DNA of 64,000 bases from Saccostrea cucullata (lineage: Eukaryota): contig NW_026941090.1 in assembly GCF_032062105.1 (NCBI RefSeq), positions 372,001-436,000 of the forward strand, written 5' to 3'. The translations under genes and the position numbers were made by a program. Below the pieces are notes generated by a model. That model did not search any database, had not been told where the DNA came from, and saw only the letters and a program-made list of their open reading frames with translations. Position 1 is the first letter of the stretch. Each line of letters begins with the position of its first letter. This document shows, piece by piece, positions 9,802 to 31,528 of this stretch.

Positions 9802-12624
9802 TATATACATAAACGTTGTTCAAATTTCACGGTGTAAATAATTATTTAGGAGAATACAAATTCATGTATTTGTGTATGCTTAAACAAAACGTTTTTCATT
9901 AATTTCCCGAAAAAATCCCTTTTTTAAAACAAGTTTCTACATGTAATATTAGTAAACTTTTTATTGTTAAAAAATGCATATATGATATATAACATTTTTG
10001 TATGCATTATATGTCATTTGTCAAGAAATTTTACGTCGAGTAGTACACAGATTTAAATTCGTTTTACAACTAAGTGACAAAATGTCAGTTTGCCAGATCC
10101 ACCACTTTTCGAATTATTATTGCTATTAACTTTAACTCAAATGGCATATTAGAAATTCCAACAACAGATGAAACCTGTCAAATTAAGTATTTTTCGTTTT
10201 TGAGGACTGATGAATATCTTTGGATATTCTTCTGCTCTCCCCCAGTATGAATAGATCCTAAGTGTTTCCTCCATACTTAATTCTTGAATAACTAATGTAA
10301 AGCATCTAGAGCAACTTAGGACACTTCTTATACATCTTCATTTCACCCTTATGTCATGCCTTCTTCACCACCTAGACTTTTTTGTTCTCGCTGGCTCTTT
10401 TCACCTCAAGTGTTGCTGTTTGTTCACCTAGTAAAATTATCCAAGCACATTTCTATAGCTTAATTTAATACTGTCCTTTTCCCAGTGTCGTCATGGACTT
10501 ACTTTATATGTTCTTCTTTCAATTATTTGTAGATTTTTAAAATAAGATCTTCTTGTTCTCTCTGCAGCCTGAAGTCCCTATAGTTATGTTGTCCCTAATC
10601 ATACTACTCTGTAGGCAGTTTTCCAGCTCAACAGTACCTATACTTTCTCTGGTTCAAGTTCCTTACTTATATATGAAAACCTGAGGCATTTTAAACAAGT
10701 ATTTTTTGAAAGTTTAAAGTGTTCTCGAGTTTCGAATAATAAGCAATCATATTGATTGGAAGCATTTCTCTTGAATAATAACATTAACATTAATAACATT
10801 AATTCCGGTGACATTAAAATAAGGTCCGAGATTCGTTTGGACTGATAACTTCGAAGAGGAAGGCATGAACCCAATCCTATAACTGAGATTTCTTGGTATC
10901 AATTACAGTTGGGGTGCAAGATAACATTTTATGTGTCAGTGACCAGTTATCACCGAGAATATTATTATTGTAATACATGTATTTCTTTTCATAATGGACA
11001 ATATTGCTTTCTGATCTTTAAAAATGTCTGACTTTCTTCTATAAAAGTTATGATTGCATAGGGAAGAAAAATGTAATATTTAACATATTTTGTCAAAAAC
11101 AGTATTTGCTTAATCTGCTTCCACACCAATACAATATTGCAGCATTCAGGTCAGTCCGGGTGATATACGCTACTCCTTGCCTTGCAATACCAGACTTTAT
11201 GGTTGTGATACATGTTATGAATCAAGGGTAGATTATTTCAAGGTTATGCTAAAAATCTTATAAAGCTAGTGAATTTTTTTGGAAACACTCGAAGGTGACA
11301 TTCTAACTCATTTCTAAGAAAAATTCTTGTTAAAATCTTCGCCAAGGTGCCAGTTTCTGTGTTTCAAACGCATCGTTTCGTAAATCAGAATCGACACTTG
11401 TATCTAAAAACATGGCATTTTAATAACATTTTTAACACCAAAGAATTACCGCTGTATGAACTGAAGTGGTTAAGAGCATTTCATTGTGTACTTTATACTG
11501 AGTGACTCTAGAAGGATTTTATTATCGTTATTTACGTGTTCCAATGAGACACACCCATTCAAATTTTCTTGCCTTTGGATTTTAACTTTTGGGCTATTCT
11601 TCCGAGTTCTTTCCGAGACTTCCTTACAAGAACAAGTGTTCTTACTGGTTACAAAATGCATGGTCACTCAGACAGTTAAATGCGTATTTTCTTTATCAAA
11701 CATAGCAAATAAAAAAAATTAATGGTTAGGAGAGAGAGAGAGAGAGAATATTGATTTAAAGAATTTTAAATTTGACACTTATCCTGTGTTTCATAAGGTC
11801 AGTTGTCCAATATCTTCTTGTTGGAAACCTTACTTCAAAGTTCTCTTCATTGACAGTAACTTAATGAGCTCTCTAATTCAATTTTGATGAAATTCAAGAA
11901 AGCCATTCATATACGAAAACTGGTAATTACATGAAGAACATCTAAATAATGGAATATAATGCGATGAAGGCCATTCCATTGTCGCATTAATACCGGGATG
12001 TCCAGAGTTCCAATTGACAACTCAAGTGGTATTGGTTCCCAATATCCTTCCGCAGTCGGGAGACCAGCGCTTAAGGTGACACACAACCAATCCTGCGGGA
12101 CAGAATAACAGCTGAAAGTTTGCAAATCCTGCGGAAGCCAAAATATTTGCTAAGAAACATTGGATAAAGGAGTAGGTATTTTTAAGATAGAGCAAAACTA
12201 GATGAAAGAGCTTTTTTTGTTTTTAAGAAACACATGTTAATGCTATTTGGAAAATAGTAAAAATCGTTTGGTTTATTTGAAATATTGTCTGTTTCACAGA
12301 CAGATAAAATGTTTGTCTGGGATTATCAGGTTTTAATTAGCGGATTAATCGGTGCATGTCGGGATTATTTTCCTAGCATTAAGCCTGAGTGATGACGTGT
12401 TGGGGGGAGCATGCACCTTAACACTAAAGCCACTGATTTCGTGCTTTCTGACTTGTTTGTATTTTTGCTCCTTCTAACTACTGGTCTGGTACTTTAGTTT
12501 TGTCCGGTGGTTCAGCATTGTCAAATATAACAGCCGCCACTGAAGAATATCTGTCATTATGTAGTGTTCTTGATTTCAGGGGGAGTGCGTACTACATCGC
12601 GTGCGGGGATTACAGCGAACAAGG

Positions 12625-15600
12625 ATGGACGTGTATATTTTTCTTTTCTTAGGATTGTTTTCAAGGTAAGGAATATTTTCATCTTTTTCGACTTCTCTTA
12701 CTTAGTTGCAGGGAATTCACCTTTAAAAGAAAAGAAAAAAGTTTCAAAAATGAAATATTAAAAATTAAAGTTTTCTTTTACATGTTTAATGGAAGAGATA
12801 ATTATTTAATATAAAAATATAGTAACCTCCAGAACAAATTTAATGAGTTCCTTGATAATCTAACATGCATCTTGATATCCGAACATGCATGTAGACATCC
12901 GGAAAAAACACATGTATATCCCTAAAATAAACAGACAAAACACAGAAAATCGCAGCAGGTTTCAATGCTAACGGCAAATATAGGATCTTTTTGAAGCGAA
13001 GAATCCTGAAAAAGATTGCTCTAGTCATTAATGGGTCTAGAATCTCAAAACGACGGCACCGCGGGAACCACTTGCTATTAAGCAAATATTAATTGGTGTA
13101 TTTTGTGCCTAATTGTAAACTGTGCGGGAACGAAGTTGTTTGAAATGTGATAATGACTTGAATTATGCACCATTTCTGTAAATTTGTAGCTTAACTAAAA
13201 GGCTTATCTGAATTTTAATCCCAAACTAAAATCTGGTGTACATTTTCTTAAAATTAATTTACTAGGTCTGATTTAAAGACAAGTACATAAATCTAGGTTA
13301 AGAGATATAATTTTTACGATGAAAAAATCGTTGTACAAACTGAAATATGTAATAAAATTTTGCAATTTAAACAGACATACAAATAATCTCTGAAGGCATC
13401 CGTCTAATTTTGCAATTTAATCAGATATATAATCTGAACCATTCGTCTGTATGGTTGGAAATTTTGACTCGCGAGTCTTGTAGACCCCCTGTCGCGAGTA
13501 ACAAAAAGATTGGCAATCGTTTATTAGCACTTCGGATGCCGCTAACTCGTGCCAAAATCATCACCTGATGCGGGGGAGTAGGCGCTGAATCTGCCTTTCA
13601 CTGCGTCTAAAACTACGTGTCGTTACAATAAAACCTAATGCTCACTTTCTATTTTTGTTATTTGTCAAAGTTTAACACACTCGTTCTATAAATAACATTA
13701 CGGGTGAGCAACTTGATAAGCTCTGAGAAGATAGGGATTGAGGATTGATGAAGGCTTTGTGTTCTATATCTGTCAATCTATCTTTTTTATCATAAAAAAT
13801 GCATTAACGTCCATCACCGTCATAAAGTGTCATAAAAATAACATAACTGGGGTAAAGATCTCGATAATTTATTATTATATATATAAAAAAAGAAATGATT
13901 CTTGCCACATATATATCGCAATGCACTGCATTTTTGGAATTATACCATTGTCTATACTACGTCCAGAAAAAGCTGAATATAGAAGACTTTAGTATATCAT
14001 GTCGTCTGCTGGTATAAGTGAAAAATTCTCGACAGGGACGTTAAACAACTTACAATCAATCCTCCACTGGTCATTTGAATGGGTGACCCCTGACTTTACG
14101 TTCAGTGGGTCAAAGTAAACTTCACCAGGTCAATATCAATAAATGCAATTTCAATGAATATCCTTGATATATACGGCTGTTGCCATATTTTAAGATACAA
14201 TAAGTGACCTCAAAATGTACAAGGGTTAGCATAATTTCTACAACAATATGATTGTCCTAGACAAGAATGTACAGGGGGAAATGAGCAAACTCTTATCAAT
14301 CAGAACACACGGCAATCGCGGTGTTACATAATGTTTTGTTGTAAAAGTTTGTACTCAAAACGGTTGTGGTAAGAAAGATTAAAAAGAATGTAATAATCCA
14401 ACATATGTACATGTAGTATATGATGTGAATTAATAAAATATACGTGAGGACTTCGTATTGTTTTGTCAGATGACCTGAGAGAAAGACTCAAATGATATTT
14501 TCCTGATCAAAGTTGTCGTTCTACTTTATTTCATTTACAATATCCTCTTCTTCTCCAATACTATTGAGTCATTTTCAACCAAACTTGACACATACTAGTA
14601 CGAGTAGTATCCTTGGGAAAATGGGAATAATCCAATTTAAGTGGTCACACTCTCTTTGAAAGGGAGACAATAAAAAATTAAAAATAAACATTTGATGGGT
14701 AATTAAAAAATCTTTCAAATAACCACCTGGTCGGAAAATTTGAAATGTAAAAGAAAATACAACATGGTGTAGATTCATAATTATTGCTTTTAAATCTAGA
14801 CCTTCGGAGTAGGGTGGAGCTACAGCGGAAGATCAAAGTTTTACATGGTTATATGTACATGTCGCAAAAAAATCTTTAAAAGCGTTCTTGGGAACAACAT
14901 ACCGAGGATCAGTCAAATTATTTGAAATGTTAGCACCCACAGGTAGTATATCCAAGTTTATCCAAATTATGACCCAAGGGGTAGGATAGGGTCACGATGG
15001 ACAATCAAAATTTTTCATCTGAATATATTTACATATAAAAAAATCTTTAAAATGGACTTAAATAACATACATTTAGTCATATATTTGTTAAAGCATCATC
15101 AGGTAGTGTAAATTCAATTTTCAAGCATGAGCCCTGTGTTGAGGGTGGGGCTACAATGGGAGATCAAGGGGGTCAAAATTTTACATAGGAATAAATTGGA
15201 AATTCAACTGTGAAGAGAAACCAGAAGAACTATAGTTATTCAGGCAATCATTGATGCCTAAACATATATTGGCCTCTTGATAAAAAATCGAAATAAGCTT
15301 TTAAATAGGTTTTAAAATTATTAGTATTAGATTAAAGAGTTGATAATGTGATAATGATCCATAATATGTATTCCGTAATTTAGCAGATAGTACCACCATT
15401 AACTTGAGTTCATCGCTATTGCTCTCATCTGGGCACCTGTATAGAGGGATTATATACACCCACATGACAAGGTCTGCAAATACGACAATTATCAGCCTCT
15501 CTAGCTAGATATTGGACAATATTTGACTTGGGGACTTGTCTAATTACCAGATTGTTTGATATAACGCCACGAAGACAAATACATCAAAATAATGGAAATA

Positions 15601-27600: not shown

Positions 27601-29186
27601 AATATAAAATCCATGTCGACTGTTCACTCCAGCTGTGAACCCATGTATTGATAAAGCAGATGATTGTATATTGTTTAACGTCCCTCTCGAAAATTTTTCA
27701 CTCATATGATGAGGACGCCACCAATTTTGTCCCATACTCGGTACTCAAGGCCATTGAGCAGGGAGGGTCTTTTTTCATGCCAGCACCTACTGCGACACGG
27801 GGCCTCGGTTTATACGGTCTCATCCGCAGGACCGGTTTCCACGTCCCACAGTGGGAGATAAGGTAGACGAACTTCAGAATGAAAACAAAGGCTTAACAAT
27901 TGGTATAAAACAAGAAAGCCAAAATACGACCCAGTGATAGAACATATATTTGCTTAACAAAGTTATAAAAATTTACGAAATGATGACTTATAACAAGGTT
28001 GTTGAAATCCCTGTACTTCAACTTATCTGTCAGTAGCCTACTTTGGTTTAAATTTGAAAAGTTATAATTTATTGGTTGAGAATCAATAATTTGAACTAAA
28101 TGTTTTAAAATTTCATACTAATCTTAACAATTTTTGAGTCGAAAACACTCAAATTTGACTTTCATATAAACTTTTTTTTTAATACATTTTTTGGTCGTTT
28201 TTATATTGTTGTTATGAATTAAGCATTGATAAAAGAGGGGAAATCCTACTATGAGACAGGGAACCTGGCTTTATTCTGAGGTTTGTCCTCTTGGGAAAAT
28301 TCTTCTCTAGACTGATTCAGGGTGGAAAGCTAGTTAATTTAAAAAGCGAGTTATGGGGGGTATCCTACTCTACAACACTGTTACTTTTGGATCAAAATGA
28401 TTTTCAGTGAGCTTGATTCCTGTACCTTGCCCAGTCTTCGTTAGATGTCACGAGAGGAACTATGAATGTCATCCTCAGCTCTACAAAATATTATAAATGC
28501 TAGAACTATCGACATATTCTTTTCCTTTCGCTTTTCAGATTTTAGCTTTTATAACGTAATGGCATGGTACTCCAACCTCATATAATACTACGTGCCCCAC
28601 GGTCTGAAAAAGCTTTTTAAGTGCCCGAAATCACAAGTAAACAAATACTTACTGGATGTCAAACAACATTCAATCATAAGAGCTGCATTTTATCTGTTTT
28701 CTTTTTTGCTTTTGTAGGGAGTCCCAACCAGAAGTACTAATTAATCCTCGCTTTTTGACCATAGAGTCCACAGGAAAGGTCTATTGGTACCAGCGGACCA
28801 AGCTCATTACTCCATGCTCCTCAGAATCTAACGGAGACTTTGTCTGCCCAGTGACTTTCGGTTCTATGCAGTTTCCTCAAAGTGAACTCGACTTTGACCG
28901 CATAGAATGTGAATATAGCAATGCAAATAGCAAGAATGTTAACGTCACTTCCGTTGCAATGGAAATAGATACAGAGGATTTACCGCGTGTACCTTTCTCT
29001 AAGAGCACGTCAAAAAGAGGAAGTTGTGTTGCTTCTATTTCCGTTGATCTGGAGGCAAGCAACAGGGAGAAATATAGTTACCAGAAATTTGAAGCTCAAA
29101 GGGGGAATATGAAATCATCGTCTGTCTATATAATGGCCAACTTAGTGACTGTTATTTTGTCTCTAACATGTGTTTGGGTAAAATAA
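12625..29186 (+). CDS. Cys-loop (pLGIC) ligand-binding-domain-only protein, AChBP-like, 271 aa, signal peptide and C-terminal hydrophobic tail
   Basis: join(12625..12665,23608..23812,27423..27523,28718..29186)=816 nt, intron phases 2/0/2 consistent. Signal peptide MDVYIFLFLGLFSRFTGTVG; motifs YNKHFRP, VLKVD, QWVDGRLYW (WxDxRLxW), VWTPDV (WxPD), GKVYW, C-x9-C then PVTFGS. Stop after VYIMANLVTVILSLTCVWVK. Exon 1 (10.9-kb intron) is the least certain part. Confidence 0.82.
14010..14062 (+). repeat. SINE 3'-end fragment
   Basis: AGTGAAAAATTCTCGACAGGGACGTTAAACAA..CAATCAATC is the reverse complement of the termini at 18235-18270 and 27670-27705. Confidence 0.55.
14800..15280 (+). repeat. Degenerate HINE-internal satellite units
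   Basis: Three decayed units with GTAGGGTGGGGC.ACAATGG..GATCAAAGTTTTACAT, matching units in 20900-21400 and 32350-32560. Confidence 0.6.
15900..16830 (-). mobile_element. Degenerate Penelope-like retroelement RT fragment with 3' end
   Basis: ORF 16540..16779 has MLEFLID...HQPIGIPMGTNCTPLFADQFLYSYE; downstream KTLAVAFNPSFSFIDEVL (decayed catalytic YIDD region); frameshifted. Confidence 0.8.
18230..18480 (-). mobile_element. tRNA-related SINE copy
   Basis: Shares body with 27660-27860 (TTTGAGCA..GAGGGATCTT..T..GCCAGCACCT..GACAC.GG.CCTCG..GTT.TAC.G.CTCATCCG.AGGACCGGT); B-box-like GATTCGAATC at ~18439. Confidence 0.65.
20514..21481 (+). mobile_element. HINE/non-autonomous Helentron-like element with internal satellite repeats
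   Basis: Head TTAGCTCATCTGAGCTGAGAGCTCAA..GTGAGCTTTTCTGATCAC, GTCC microsatellite, ~5 tandem ~145-170-bp units, 3' AAGTGAGCGTTGTGGCCCATGGACCTTTTGTT with terminal palindrome. This is the architecture of bivalve HINE/pearl elements. Confidence 0.85.
24005..24124. repeat. Near-perfect inverted repeat (~44-bp arms, ~31-nt loop)
   Basis: AAACAATAAAATG-CTTTCTTTGTTTGTTATTACTGGAATTAACG ... CGTTAATTCCAGTAATAACAAACAAAGAAAGACATTTTATTGTTT. Confidence 0.9.
27660..27860 (-). mobile_element. SINE copy (same family as 18230-18480)
   Basis: Direct sequence similarity to 18230-18440. Confidence 0.65.
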
Positions 29187-30772
29187 AAGATATGTAAAGA
29201 AAGCTATTTAATGTGAAAGTAGACATGAATATAAGCAAAAATGAGAGATAATAGTTCATCATGCAAAGGCAGTTCGTCTCTTTGAAGAAGCAACCTGTAC
29301 ATGATATGAATGTTTTAAAACTGAATTATTTGTAGATACATGTACGTGTCTATTCCTTATCCACCACTGACTTATTCTTCCAAAATATCCATTTTTTAAA
29401 AAAATGTGTTTCAGAGAGTATACTGCGCAAATCTTTAGTGCATTCTAAATACTTCTGTACCAAAGCTTGTGAACACTATACAAAGGACGATAGTGACTTT
29501 TATAGCTGTAGTAACTTTGCTAGTACATGCATTTATGCTGTTATACACGTAGCAGAATATTTAGCGCTTATCAAATCGACTGCATAATTGCACATAGGTA
29601 TAAGCAGGTTTTTGTAACTTTGAATAAAGGATACAATATATCTGCACAAAAATACTCATGTAGGTTTTTGCATTATTAAGCCTTGAAAATAAAGTCTGTT
29701 AATCCATTTTCATTTAGTTGGAAAAATATTGTATGTTGTTTTCTTGAATGTATAAAATTATTTTACAACAACTGTATATGAAACTGTCAAAATGGTCAAA
29801 GAGTCAATGCTTTTTATATAGTTTGAGAGAGAAAGAAAGAGAGAAAGAAAGATAGAGAGAGAGTTTTCTATAAAACAAGTGACGTGTAGTTCATCATATA
29901 AAAATCAAATTAAGCAATCGATGGATGTCCTATCCCAATCTTTTGCATAAATTAACTCTAGCTTATATTAATTTCTCAGATACTAGAATACATGTTTTGT
30001 TATATGAAAGAGTCTGTATTAAGGTCTTCGTTTTATAGATCACACTGACATTAAACATTTAAAATAATCCTTGCATTCTGTTTTGTATCATCTAGATGCT
30101 ATTCATTGATTAAAAATGCCAAAAAAAAGCCATTTAAAGTCTTGCAATTGTCTCACTGAAAACGCGTAGCCATAGCCATAATGATTTAAATGGTCAGTGA
30201 AATGGGGTAGCAAGGTATGGTTGGAAATGGTTTCCAATAGACTATACATTCTTTTGTGTTTATGATACATCCAATAGAATCGATAGAAGTGAACATTAAT
30301 TAACAAATTATTTAATTGTTATTATGAAGACGGTTTTAAACAGCATTGTGAAGGGCTATTCGTAAAGCCATGTACGACGGGGAGTTTAAACTGCCATGGA
30401 TTAATTCTGAATACATTACACAGAATCTTGCTTTTGTGTATATGTATTAAATTTTTTATCAAGATTTTAAGCAGATTGTGTTCTAATGTTTTGGATTACT
30501 TCGAATCGGAAACTAATCACCAATATCTAGGTATCGTTTTCATTGGGTATGTTTTTCTCAGTTTAATCAGTGTGTGGCATTAGTTTGTTTGTTTCTTGTT
30601 TTAAGAAATCGAGATCTCCAACACATAGACAAAGGATAGAGTGACTGGACGCTAAACATTTTAGTAGTCTTTTTTCATGTTTTTGGAAGTCCGACATCTG
30701 GGACGCATACAATCGTGTCTTGGTACTTTTGATTTGTGTTTGTGACATTGTCGATCTAAACAAGGAGTCAAT

Positions 30773-31528
30773 ATGACCGCTCCAACGGCCCCAATAGGGT
30801 GGTCCTCCGCGAGGATGAACATGCACTTTAAACCGGTAACACCAAGGAAGGCTGAGACAGGGATGTACTTTAACCTCCACAAAAACGTGAAAAGGTCTCT
30901 GCTTCCCAAAGAAGTTCAAAACATGGAAACCCAAAGTGTGGACCTTGCCAGACAGATACTTCACCGCCAAAGACAGAAGTCTCGGATTTCCCGCGAGAAA
31001 TACAGGCAACTCGTCTCTCAAGGATCTTCTAGGTTCACAGTCGTCAATTCCGAGCCCGGAGGTCGTACAAATTTTTCTGAGGATTTTTCTAGAAATCTTT
31101 ATCTTCCACCCGTTGGGCGCCAAAAGCCAAACACACCTATGACCCCTGGGTCAAGGTACACTGCCGATGACGTCAGAAGTATTGTGGATAGACTGTCGAC
31201 ATACGATCCATGTAAAGTTCCAGAGTCCAGGGGACAGTTTATAAAATTACCGCCCCCTATCGTGTATAAGAAAAAATACAGCGAAAACGAGGTTCAGTCA
31301 ATCGTGGACCGATTATCGGAGTATAACCCACTGAAAGGTCCAGCGGAATCGAAAGGGATTCCAACCATAGTTCGCAGAATCCCGCGTCAAAGTATGGTTC
31401 CACCACAGAAGTGTACTTCCGATGAAGTGGAAGACATCGTAGAAAGATTGTGTAGCGTTCATTTTGATATTCCTGAAAAGGAACATCGGTACGTGCCAAC
31501 ACCTTATCCACTTTCAGCACGATCGTAA
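30773..31528 (+). CDS. Uncharacterised 251-aa basic/Pro-rich protein with three internal repeats; single coding exon
   Basis: Long ORF with GC content above background; repeats YTADDVRSIVDRLSTYDP..PESRG / YSENEVQSIVDRLSEYNP..PAESKG / CTSDEVEDIVERLC conserved at protein rather than DNA level; plausible UTR acceptor (TTGTTTTAAG) at ~30605. Confidence 0.8.
   Translation: MTAPTAPIGWSSARMNMHFKPVTPRKAETGMYFNLHKNVKRSLLPKEVQNMETQSVDLARQILHRQRQKSRISREKYRQLVSQGSSRFTVVNSEPGGRTNFSEDFSRNLYLPPVGRQKPNTPMTPGSRYTADDVRSIVDRLSTYDPCKVPESRGQFIKLPPPIVYKKKYSENEVQSIVDRLSEYNPLKGPAESKGIPTIVRRIPRQSMVPPQKCTSDEVEDIVERLCSVHFDIPEKEHRYVPTPYPLSARS

What the first reader, a model, noticed from the sequence alone, without database searches (positions are those of the whole stretch)
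12625..29186. Channel-less Cys-loop receptor domain with a GPI-like or vestigial-M1 tail
Seen: signal peptide plus a full pLGIC extracellular domain, then a polar linker (NREKYSYQKFEAQRGNMKSSS), ~19 hydrophobic residues and a stop. No M2-M4 exons are recognisable before the next gene. Known: molluscan AChBPs and pearl-oyster ACCBP are soluble LBD-only proteins ending after beta-10. Inference: this protein may be a surface-tethered (GPI or single-pass) LBD-only class acting as decoy, scavenger, co-receptor or dominant-negative subunit. The tail fits a GPI signal (small residues G/N/SSS then a hydrophobic end) but YIMANLV also echoes nAChR M1 (FYxxNLxxP) without the conserved Pro.
Basis: partly seen in the sequence, partly recalled or inferred. 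Interest (0 to 1): 0.8.

Follow-up and report, generated by a model that had tools for sequence, protein, structure and literature searches.

The report
Membrane-tethered, channel-less Cys-loop receptor domain
This oyster gene makes only the ligand-binding half of a nicotinic-type receptor and ends in a short greasy tail that looks like a GPI-anchor signal; it is expressed, it is conserved across molluscs, and it belongs to a family that has been counted in the literature but never studied.

Summary
Four exons with GT..AG borders (12625-12665, 23608-23812, 27423-27523, 28718-29186) encode 271 aa. The protein has a signal peptide, a full Neur_chan_LBD domain, a roughly 25-residue polar helical stalk, an invariant Ser-Ser-Ser and a 19-20-residue weakly hydrophobic end.

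- **Transcripts:** Two same-species transcript contigs and contigs from four more runs carry exactly these splice junctions. They read through the stop into an ~880-nt 3'UTR that ends 12 nt after an ATTAAA signal. None splices into transmembrane exons, and no such exons were found in the window.
- **Conservation:** Orthologues of 272-276 aa in other oysters, including Ostrea edulis, end the same way.
- **Family:** On a tree of the ligand-binding domain alone, the protein sits in a well-supported 30-member clade with no channel subunits. Nearly all members have the tail. Named members come from bivalves, gastropods and a cephalopod.
- **M1 idea:** The tail shows no similarity to channel helix M1 beyond composition, and it lies about 25 residues too far from strand beta-10.
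- **Anchor:** A GPI anchor is the best reading (small-residue site, spacer, weakly hydrophobic end, no cytoplasmic residues), but it is unproven. A single-pass anchor remains possible.
- **Prior knowledge:** One 2019 survey tallies an 'LBD-TM' domain architecture without comment. The ligand and the function are unknown.

The parts
12271..12665 (+). Exon 1. The 5'UTR starts at 12271 or earlier. The CDS starts at ATG 12625 and encodes MDVYIFLFLGLFS (signal-peptide core). The donor GT is at 12666.
   Evidence: Transcript contigs L022 and L023 align at 12271/12423-12665. Sequence read. The same N-terminus is found in O. edulis P0004.
23608..23812 (+). Exon 2. It holds the end of the signal peptide, the N-terminal helix and beta-1/beta-2 of the LBD, with an NES glycosylation sequon.
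   Evidence: (PF02931 positions 4-48).
27423..27523 (+). Exon 3. It encodes QWVDGRLYW...WTPDVYFLN (beta-2 to the loop A region), with an NVT sequon.
   Evidence: (PF02931 positions 56-91). The joint 27523->28718 (GT..AG) is present in 4 of 4 runs.
28718..29186 (+). Coding part of exon 4. It holds the rest of the LBD, the stalk, the SSS, the hydrophobic tail and the TAA stop at 29184-29186.
   Evidence: (PF02931 positions 104-202).
28815..28847 (+). Shortened, hydrophilic Cys-loop, C-SSESNGDFV-C. It has 9 residues between the cysteines instead of 13 and lacks the FPFD motif.
   Evidence: Sequence. The two cysteines are invariant in the 28-member alignment.
29049..29114 (+). Polar stalk LEASNREKYSYQKFEAQRGNMK. 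It is predicted to be a helix that continues from the end of beta-10.
   Evidence: The AlphaFold2 model has beta-10 at P0008 residues 221-233 and a helix at 235-278.
29115..29123 (+). Ser-Ser-Ser, the candidate GPI attachment (omega) site.
   Evidence: S257, S258 and S259 are invariant in six oyster orthologues, within a region of only 38-58% identity.
29124..29183 (+). C-terminal tail VYIMANLVTVILSLTCVWVK. It is weakly hydrophobic and only one residue follows the hydrophobic core.
29175..29183 (+). TGG|GTAAAA, a sequence that resembles a splice donor but is not used.
   Evidence: All transcript contigs are collinear across it.
29187..30067 (+). 3'UTR. An ATTAAA signal lies at 30050-30055, and both same-species contigs end at 30067.
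   Evidence: Indels relative to the close relative begin only at 29338.

Best explanation
The locus is an intact, expressed four-exon gene for a channel-less Cys-loop receptor protein. The protein has an N-terminal signal peptide, a glycosylated AChBP-like beta-sandwich (the ligand-binding domain), a polar helical stalk of about 25 residues and a C-terminal membrane-attachment signal. That signal is most likely exchanged in the ER for a GPI anchor at the invariant Ser-Ser-Ser.

Shown here: the gene structure, the mRNA, the fold, the absence of any channel domain, conservation of the tail, and membership of an old mollusc-wide clade in which all members lack a channel and nearly all carry the tail.

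Inferred: the protein is displayed on the outer face of the cell membrane, probably as a ring of five like its relatives. It probably binds something other than acetylcholine, because the loop B Trp (FGSW becomes FGSM) and the loop C Cys pair are missing. With no pore, it could only capture, present or compete for a ligand rather than conduct ions.
For: - **Gene model:**
- **mRNA:** Two same-species contigs align in exactly four blocks through the stop to 30067. An ATTAAA signal lies 12 nt upstream of that end. Four more runs from four studies show the exon 3-4 joint and collinear passage through the stop, with no joint leaving exon 4.
- **Domains:** PF02931 scores 77.4 bits on P0008. PF02932 hits none of 28 clade members at E<=0.1. 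A local profile search found no TM-domain exon in the 64-kb window.
- **Fold:** The AlphaFold2 model has pLDDT 88.6. The best PDB matches are AChBPs, with TM-score 0.83.
- **Tail conservation:**
- **Selection:** Against a ~95%-identical relative, 16 codon changes are synonymous and 12 are not. There are no indels in the CDS but several in the UTR. The stalk and tail carry only one conservative change.
- **Clade:** 30 rows, SH-aLRT 98, 24 classed LBD+tail, 5 'other' (most also tailed) and one 228-aa row without a tail; no channels. Named members are oysters, Pinctada, scallop, unionid, Dreissena, Mactra, eight gastropods and Argonauta.
- **GPI-like features:**
  - A small-residue triplet is followed by a ~6-residue spacer and a 13-residue core, with 1 residue after the core.
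  - 17 of 28 clade tails pass my rule, against 6 of 50 channel C-termini.
  - The median core length is 13 against 18.
  - The best 19-residue window scores +0.4 kcal/mol for this protein and a median of +1.6 for the clade. The best TM helices of channel relatives have a median of -1.7.
- **Cys-loop:** It is short, hydrophilic and lacks the FPFD motif, as expected for a domain that never touches a pore domain.
Against: - No dedicated GPI predictor (NetGPI, PredGPI, big-PI) was available.
- The hydrophobic stretch is 19-20 residues long, enough to span a membrane. AlphaFold2 draws the stalk and tail as one helix, which does not distinguish an anchor signal from a true TM helix.
- M4 helices of channel relatives are also only marginally hydrophobic (median +0.35).
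- Self-assembly was not supported: the complex prediction gave no verdict.
- The tissue of expression, the protein's presence at the surface and the ligand are all unknown.
- NCBI models in O. edulis and C. angulata include an isoform that leaves exon 4 early and joins the next gene.
Confidence: 0.65

Rival explanations
1. The protein and the mRNA are as described, but the tail is a genuine single-pass transmembrane anchor (type I) with essentially no cytoplasmic part, not a GPI signal.
For: The hydrophobic stretch is 19-20 residues long. AlphaFold2 predicts a continuous helix with pLDDT 81-87 over the last 20 residues. Some clade members have more hydrophobic tails (for example P0022 at -0.9 and P0004 at -0.3) or several residues after the core (P0020, P0038). 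Jiao et al. 2019 list such proteins as 'LBD-TM' on the basis of SMART.
Against: There is no cytoplasmic stop-transfer sequence; only 0-2 residues follow the core in the oysters. Polar or charged residues sit inside the stretch (N here, D in P0012, E in P0001). The tail is only weakly hydrophobic compared with the best TM helices of relatives. An invariant SSS lies at the right distance for an omega site.
Confidence: 0.25
2. The tail is a vestige of channel helix M1. The gene would then be a recently truncated channel subunit, either a decaying pseudogene or a dominant-negative subunit that joins full-length receptors.
For: YIMANLV loosely recalls the YxxNLxxP motif of M1. The frame ends at a donor-like TGG|GTAAAA. 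A forced global profile alignment places the region opposite M1 (uninformative by construction).
Against: - A profile of 50 M1 segments scores the tail at 0.1 bits, against a best shuffle of 1.7. Only 2 of 28 clade tails beat all 20 of their shuffles.
- The tail begins about 25 residues after beta-10.
- PF02932 is not detected.
- The architecture is shared across bivalves, gastropods and a cephalopod in one clade without channels, so it is old.
- The frame is intact, with more synonymous than non-synonymous changes.
- The Cys-loop lacks the FPFD coupling motif.
Confidence: 0.04
3. The tail is removed or ignored and the protein acts as a soluble secreted AChBP-like binder.
For: The closest structures are soluble AChBPs. 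GPI proteins are often shed.
Against: Soluble AChBP-like relatives in the same search end just after beta-10 with no tail. Here the stalk, SSS and tail are kept across a whole clade.
Confidence: 0.05

Closest known systems
Molluscan acetylcholine-binding proteins (Lymnaea, Aplysia and Bulinus AChBP)
   Same: Both have a signal peptide plus a pLGIC ligand-binding domain and no pore domain. They share the same fold (Foldseek top hits 4qab, 5ouh and 7pdr, TM-score 0.83 by target, 17-19% identity).
   Different: AChBPs are soluble and end a few residues after beta-10. They keep the aromatic cage and the loop C Cys pair (own knowledge). This protein adds a ~25-residue stalk and a hydrophobic end. 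It has FGSM instead of FGSW, a 9-residue loop C without the Cys pair, and a 9-residue Cys-loop. On the tree it lies in a different clade from the tail-less AChBP-like proteins.
'LBD-TM' domain combination in Jiao et al. 2019, BMC Genomics 20:937 (PMC6896357), Table 1
   Same: The architecture is probably the same: an LBD followed by one predicted TM segment. The table counts 2 such genes in C. gigas, 8 in P. f. martensii, 2-11 in other molluscs, 5-9 in annelids, and none in cnidarians or vertebrates.
   Different: The paper gives only a SMART tally. It has no sequences discussed, no phylogeny of the class, no GPI interpretation, no expression data and no function (zero occurrences of AChBP, GPI or truncated).
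Nicotinic-type pLGIC subunits, including the expanded intronless mollusc genes
   Same: They share a homologous Neur_chan_LBD, a conserved WxPD and the Cys-loop cysteines. The genome carries more than 150 such genes.
   Different: This protein has no Neur_chan_memb domain, no FPFD in the Cys-loop, multiple exons and no close paralogue in its own genome.
Pinctada ACCBP (amorphous calcium carbonate-binding protein)
   Different: ACCBP is described as a soluble extrapallial-fluid protein (own knowledge). I did not identify it among the hits, so its relation to this clade is untested.
GPI-anchored decoy or modulator proteins such as Lynx1 (Ly6/uPAR) or TRAIL-R3
   Same: They are a functional analogy only: surface-tethered proteins without a signalling domain that bind or compete for a receptor's ligand (own knowledge).
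   Different: The folds are unrelated, and no test was done here.

Membership tests
pLGIC ligand-binding domain (Pfam PF02931 Neur_chan_LBD) | Profile match over the gathering score across the whole domain | tested here: met
   P0008, which equals the window model except for one residue and an 8-residue N-terminal extension, scores 77.4 bits against a cut-off of 26, at residues 39-231 and profile positions 4-202 of 216. The exon pieces match in the correct order.
pLGIC ligand-binding domain (Pfam PF02931 Neur_chan_LBD) | AChBP/nAChR-type beta-sandwich fold with a Cys-loop disulfide pair | tested here: met
   The AlphaFold2 model has pLDDT 88.6 and ten strands. Foldseek finds AChBP at TM-score 0.83. 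C157 and C167 are invariant. The loop has 9 residues rather than 13.
Pentameric ligand-gated ion channel subunit | Four-helix pore domain (PF02932 Neur_chan_memb, M1-M4) after the LBD | tested here: not met
   There is no PF02932 hit in the exon 4 translation at E<=1, nor in 28 clade members at E<=0.1. The mRNA ends at 30067. A local profile search of all six frames of the window found no TM exon.
Pentameric ligand-gated ion channel subunit | Cys-loop FPFD motif that couples to the M2-M3 loop | tested here: not met
   The Cys-loop reads C-SSESNGDFV-C, and the whole clade lacks the motif. The coupling role of the motif is from own knowledge.
Acetylcholine-binding protein (AChBP sensu stricto) | Soluble protein that ends shortly after beta-10 | tested here: not met
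   46 residues follow beta-10, including a hydrophobic end.
Acetylcholine-binding protein (AChBP sensu stricto) | Aromatic cage (loop B Trp, loop C Tyr-x-Cys-Cys) | tested here: not met
   The sequence has FGSM where the family consensus has FGSW. Loop C is LPRVPFSKS, with no Cys pair. Binding itself was not tested.
GPI-anchored protein | N-terminal signal peptide | tested here: inconclusive
   The N-terminus MDVYIFLFLGLFSRFTGTVG is hydrophobic and conserved in orthologues. Three conserved N-x-S/T sequons fit a secretory route. No signal-peptide predictor was available.
GPI-anchored protein | C-terminal signal: small omega, omega+1 and omega+2 residues, a 5-10-residue spacer, and a 10-20-residue hydrophobic end with no cytoplasmic tail | tested here: inconclusive
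   My own rule is met: SSS, a spacer of 6, a core of 13 and 1 residue after it. The tail is weakly hydrophobic and the SSS is invariant. These are heuristics, not a calibrated predictor.
GPI-anchored protein | Lipid anchor shown by PI-PLC release or mass spectrometry | not testable with these tools
   This needs an experiment.
Mollusc-wide clade of tailed LBD-only proteins (defined here) | Groups on an LBD-only tree with proteins of 260-330 aa that end in a hydrophobic tail, to the exclusion of channel subunits | tested here: met
   The clade has 30 rows with SH-aLRT 98 on a branch of length 0.7, and contains no channels. This is a quick IQ-TREE search without bootstraps, and the root is not inferred.

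The most novel reading that the evidence does not exclude
Molluscs carry an ancient family of GPI-anchored, ring-forming AChBP-like surface proteins that predates the split of bivalves, gastropods and cephalopods. These proteins have lost the acetylcholine cage and bind a different, still unknown ligand. That would be a third way of using the Cys-loop receptor domain, alongside ion channels and soluble AChBPs. The fast-changing loop F / beta-9 / loop C face would tune what is bound.
Probability: 0.4. Interest if true: 0.75.

Novelty: new variant of a known kind. Interest (0 to 1): 0.6.

Why it matters
LBD-only Cys-loop proteins are so far known as soluble AChBPs, which have been the main structural stand-ins for nicotinic receptors. 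A conserved, expressed, membrane-tethered version without the acetylcholine cage would show that the domain was also recruited as a cell-surface binding module with no pore. It would account for some of the many odd 'nAChR-like' gene models in lophotrochozoan genomes, which automatic annotation currently calls 'acetylcholine receptor subunit alpha-like'. It would also offer a small, probably stable pentameric scaffold with a new ligand specificity. The question is directly testable with a tagged construct and PI-PLC.

Tried and rejected
- **Hidden TM exons:** A profile built from 12 full-length paralogues of this genome, searched against all 3,575 stop-to-stop frames of the window, found only LBD exons 2 and 3. 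Genome-wide PF02932 and PF02931 scans were saturated by more than 150 other genes and said nothing about this window.
- **Paralogues:** A search of the window's own genome with exon 4 found only the locus itself.
- **Splice donor at 29177/29178:** Rejected, because every transcript reads through it.
- **Vestigial M1:** Rejected. The forced global hhalign was uninformative, because a global alignment must place the tail opposite M1/M2.
- **Self-assembly:** Complex prediction on three copies of the LBD scored 0.18 and 0.03 against a mark of 0.32. The tool's verdict was 'no answer', so this counts neither for nor against.
- **O. edulis locus:** The look-up of encoding contigs held no record for P0004.
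- **Literature:**
  - Three searches pairing AChBP or acetylcholine-binding protein with GPI, GPI-anchored or glycosylphosphatidylinositol listed almost no paper holding both terms. The one exception, PMC3128620, is a shell-formation gene study that I did not read.
  - A search for the locus and run identifiers found nothing.
- **Joined model:** Exons were searched one by one by reference. The database protein P0008 stood in for the whole protein; it matches all four exon translations with one V/I difference.
Full report
**What is in the sequence.** The window is AT-rich animal DNA (GC about 0.33). It lies at C23227:372001-436000 of a 1.17-Gb assembly. By its closest protein matches the genome is an oyster.

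- Exon 1 starts at ATG 12625 and ends at AAG|GTAAGG after 12665.
- Exon 2 is 23608-23812.
- Exon 3 is 27423-27523.
- Exon 4 starts at 28718 and ends with TAA at 29184-29186.

All introns are GT..AG and the phases fit, giving 271 codons. Each exon piece hits Pfam Neur_chan_LBD in the correct order, at profile positions 4-48, 56-91 and 104-202 of 216. The last codons are TGG GTA AAA TAA. Because TGG|GTAAAA resembles a splice donor, I first suspected that the frame continued into transmembrane exons.

**Transcripts settle the gene model.** The word search returned P0008, a 279-aa protein. It matches all four exon translations with a single V/I difference, and it carries eight extra N-terminal residues read from the 5'UTR.

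Its two source contigs come from two different sequencing runs and are 99-100% identical to the window. They align in exactly four blocks: 12271 (or 12423)-12665, 23608-23812, 27423-27523 and 28718-30067. The mRNA therefore reads straight through the donor-like site and the stop into an ~880-nt 3'UTR. Both contigs end at 30067, 12 nt after an ATTAAA signal at 30050-30055.

Contigs from four further runs in four studies hold a ~95%-identical relative. They show the same exon 3-4 joint (27523 to 28718, GT..AG) and run collinear through the stop to 29487-30010. No joint leaves exon 4. Against this relative, exons 3-4 carry 16 synonymous and 12 non-synonymous codon changes and no indels. Indels begin only at 29338, in the UTR.

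A profile built from twelve full-length paralogues of the same genome found no pore-domain exon anywhere in the window. The channel-less reading is therefore not an annotation gap.

Exons were searched by reference and P0008 served as the whole-protein stand-in.

**The tail is conserved.** Orthologues of 272-276 aa were found in Ostrea edulis and in four Crassostrea-like transcript contigs. NCBI names the O. edulis protein 'acetylcholine receptor subunit alpha-like isoform X1'. All of them end at the same point with the same layout: a charged stretch, then M-x-S-S-S, then about six mixed residues, then about thirteen hydrophobic ones, then zero to two residues and a stop.

- The Met and the three Ser are invariant, although the region around them is only 38-58% identical.
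- The N-terminal part of the domain is 80-86% identical.
- Three N-glycosylation sequons are conserved as well.

**Where the tail sits in the fold.** With a 128-sequence alignment, AlphaFold2 gives a confident model (mean pLDDT 88.6).
- Strand beta-9 is at P0008 residues 198-211.
- Loop C is short, at 212-220 (LPRVPFSKS).
- Strand beta-10 is at 221-233.
- One long helix runs from 235 to the end.

The hydrophobic stretch therefore begins about 25 residues after beta-10. In channel subunits M1 follows within a few residues. The best PDB matches are AChBPs (TM-score 0.83 by target, 17-19% identity).

I tested the 'echo of M1' directly. A profile of 50 M1 segments from channel relatives scores this tail at 0.1 bits, below the best of 20 composition-preserving shuffles (1.7 bits). 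Only 2 of 28 related tails beat all of their shuffles, which is about what chance would give. PF02932 is not detected in any of 28 relatives. The M1 reading is rejected.

**GPI signal or transmembrane anchor.** No calibrated GPI predictor was available, so I used two rough measures.
- **Omega-site rule:** The rule requires a small omega and omega+2 residue, a 3-11-residue spacer, a hydrophobic core and at most six residues after the core. This protein meets it (SSS, spacer 6, core 13, one residue after). So do 17 of 28 clade tails, against 6 of 50 channel C-termini. The median core length is 13 in the clade and 18 in the channels.
- **Membrane-insertion scale:** The best 19-residue window scores +0.4 kcal/mol here and a median of +1.6 in the clade. 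The best helices of channel relatives have a median of -1.7. M4 helices are also marginal, with a median of +0.35.

Other features also favour a GPI signal. Polar or charged residues interrupt the stretch in several orthologues, there is no cytoplasmic tail, and the Ser triplet is invariant. I put a GPI anchor at roughly twice the odds of a single-pass anchor, but it is not shown.

**It is a family, not a one-off.** The exhaustive profile search gave 1,126 hits at E<=0.001. The best-scoring ones are mostly 260-330 aa long and end in a hydrophobic stretch.

On a tree built only from the ligand-binding-domain columns, the window's protein falls in a 30-row clade with SH-aLRT 98 and a long stem. 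The clade holds 24 proteins classed as LBD+tail, five that my crude classifier left as 'other' (most also have the tail), one short row without a tail (228 aa, probably partial) and no channel subunit.

Named members come from three mollusc classes:
- **Bivalves:** Pinctada, Ylistrum, Potamilus, Dreissena and Mactra.
- **Gastropods:** Patella, Babylonia, Pomacea, Arion, Elysia, Bulinus, Physella and Bradybaena.
- **Cephalopod:** Argonauta.

All clade members share the short hydrophilic Cys-loop without FPFD, and they lack the Trp after the 'GS' motif. A second, separate set of tailed proteins, which includes a Capitella protein, nests among tail-less AChBP-like proteins. The tail may therefore have arisen more than once. 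The tree is a quick search without bootstraps and its root is not inferred.

**What is already known.** Jiao et al. 2019 (PMC6896357) tally an 'LBD-TM' domain combination in their Table 1. They count 2 such genes in C. gigas, 8 in P. f. martensii, others in molluscs and annelids, and none in cnidarians or vertebrates. The paper does not comment further and does not mention AChBP or GPI. Full-text searches pairing AChBP with GPI terms listed almost no paper holding both terms. The one that does is a shell-formation gene study that I did not read. The architecture has therefore been counted. I found no study in the library searched that describes its conservation, its clade, its GPI-like signal or its function.

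**Most likely mechanism.**
- **Shown:** an expressed secretory-type protein made of an AChBP-like domain, a stalk and a conserved C-terminal hydrophobic signal, with no pore.
- **Inferred:**
  - It is attached to the outer leaflet by GPI at the Ser triplet.
  - It assembles into rings, as its relatives do.
  - It binds a ligand other than acetylcholine.
  - It acts by capture, presentation or competition rather than by ion flow.

The non-synonymous differences from the close relative cluster in the loop F / beta-9 / loop C face: 9 of 12 fall in exon 4 residues 60-106. This region is also the least conserved part of the domain among oysters. Both observations fit a changeable binding surface. 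The self-assembly prediction gave no verdict.

**An open side issue.** NCBI models in O. edulis (isoform X2, 444 aa) and C. angulata (446 aa) join the first ~196 residues of this domain to the neighbouring single-exon gene, which lies at 30773-31525 in the window. The junction differs between the two species. No such joint appears in any of the six contigs examined here. It does not lead into transmembrane exons in either case.

**Verdict.** The locus is a new variant of a known kind: a membrane-tethered relative of the AChBPs that belongs to an old, uncharacterised molluscan family.

Noticed in passing
window 30773-31525 (+): This is the neighbouring single-exon ORF of 251 aa (MTAPTAPIGW...YVPTPYPLSARS), with three repeats around 'EVxSIVDRLSxYxP'. 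It has no significant Pfam hit. NCBI models in O. edulis (P0007) and C. angulata (P0013) fuse it to the first ~196 residues of the LBD gene. No such joint appears in the contigs of this species or its close relative.
   Followed up: partly
window about 27661-27856 (intron 3 of the LBD gene): This is a short interspersed repeat. Summed contig depth reaches about 28,000 in the runs laid, and there are many loose ends at its borders. Similar open-frame text occurs at 18328-18455.
   Followed up: no
G000 genome-wide; for example C23227:980303-992951 on the window's own contig: More than 150 scored Neur_chan_LBD and Neur_chan_memb matches were found. Most are single open frames of 400-500 aa, that is, intronless nicotinic-type receptor genes in tandem clusters. 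This fits the expansion reported by Jiao et al. 2019.
   Followed up: partly
window 29175-29183: TGG|GTAAAA at the end of the reading frame looks like a splice donor, but every transcript contig reads through it.
   Followed up: yes
The Cys-loop has 9 rather than 13 residues between the cysteines. Both traits are shared by the whole 28-member clade.
   Followed up: partly
window 28718-30067 versus runs X1, X2, X4 and X12: The four runs laid hold a version about 5% different from the window. Two other runs (the source of P0008) are 99-100% identical. The public data therefore hold either a sister species or a very divergent haplotype under one organism label.
   Followed up: no
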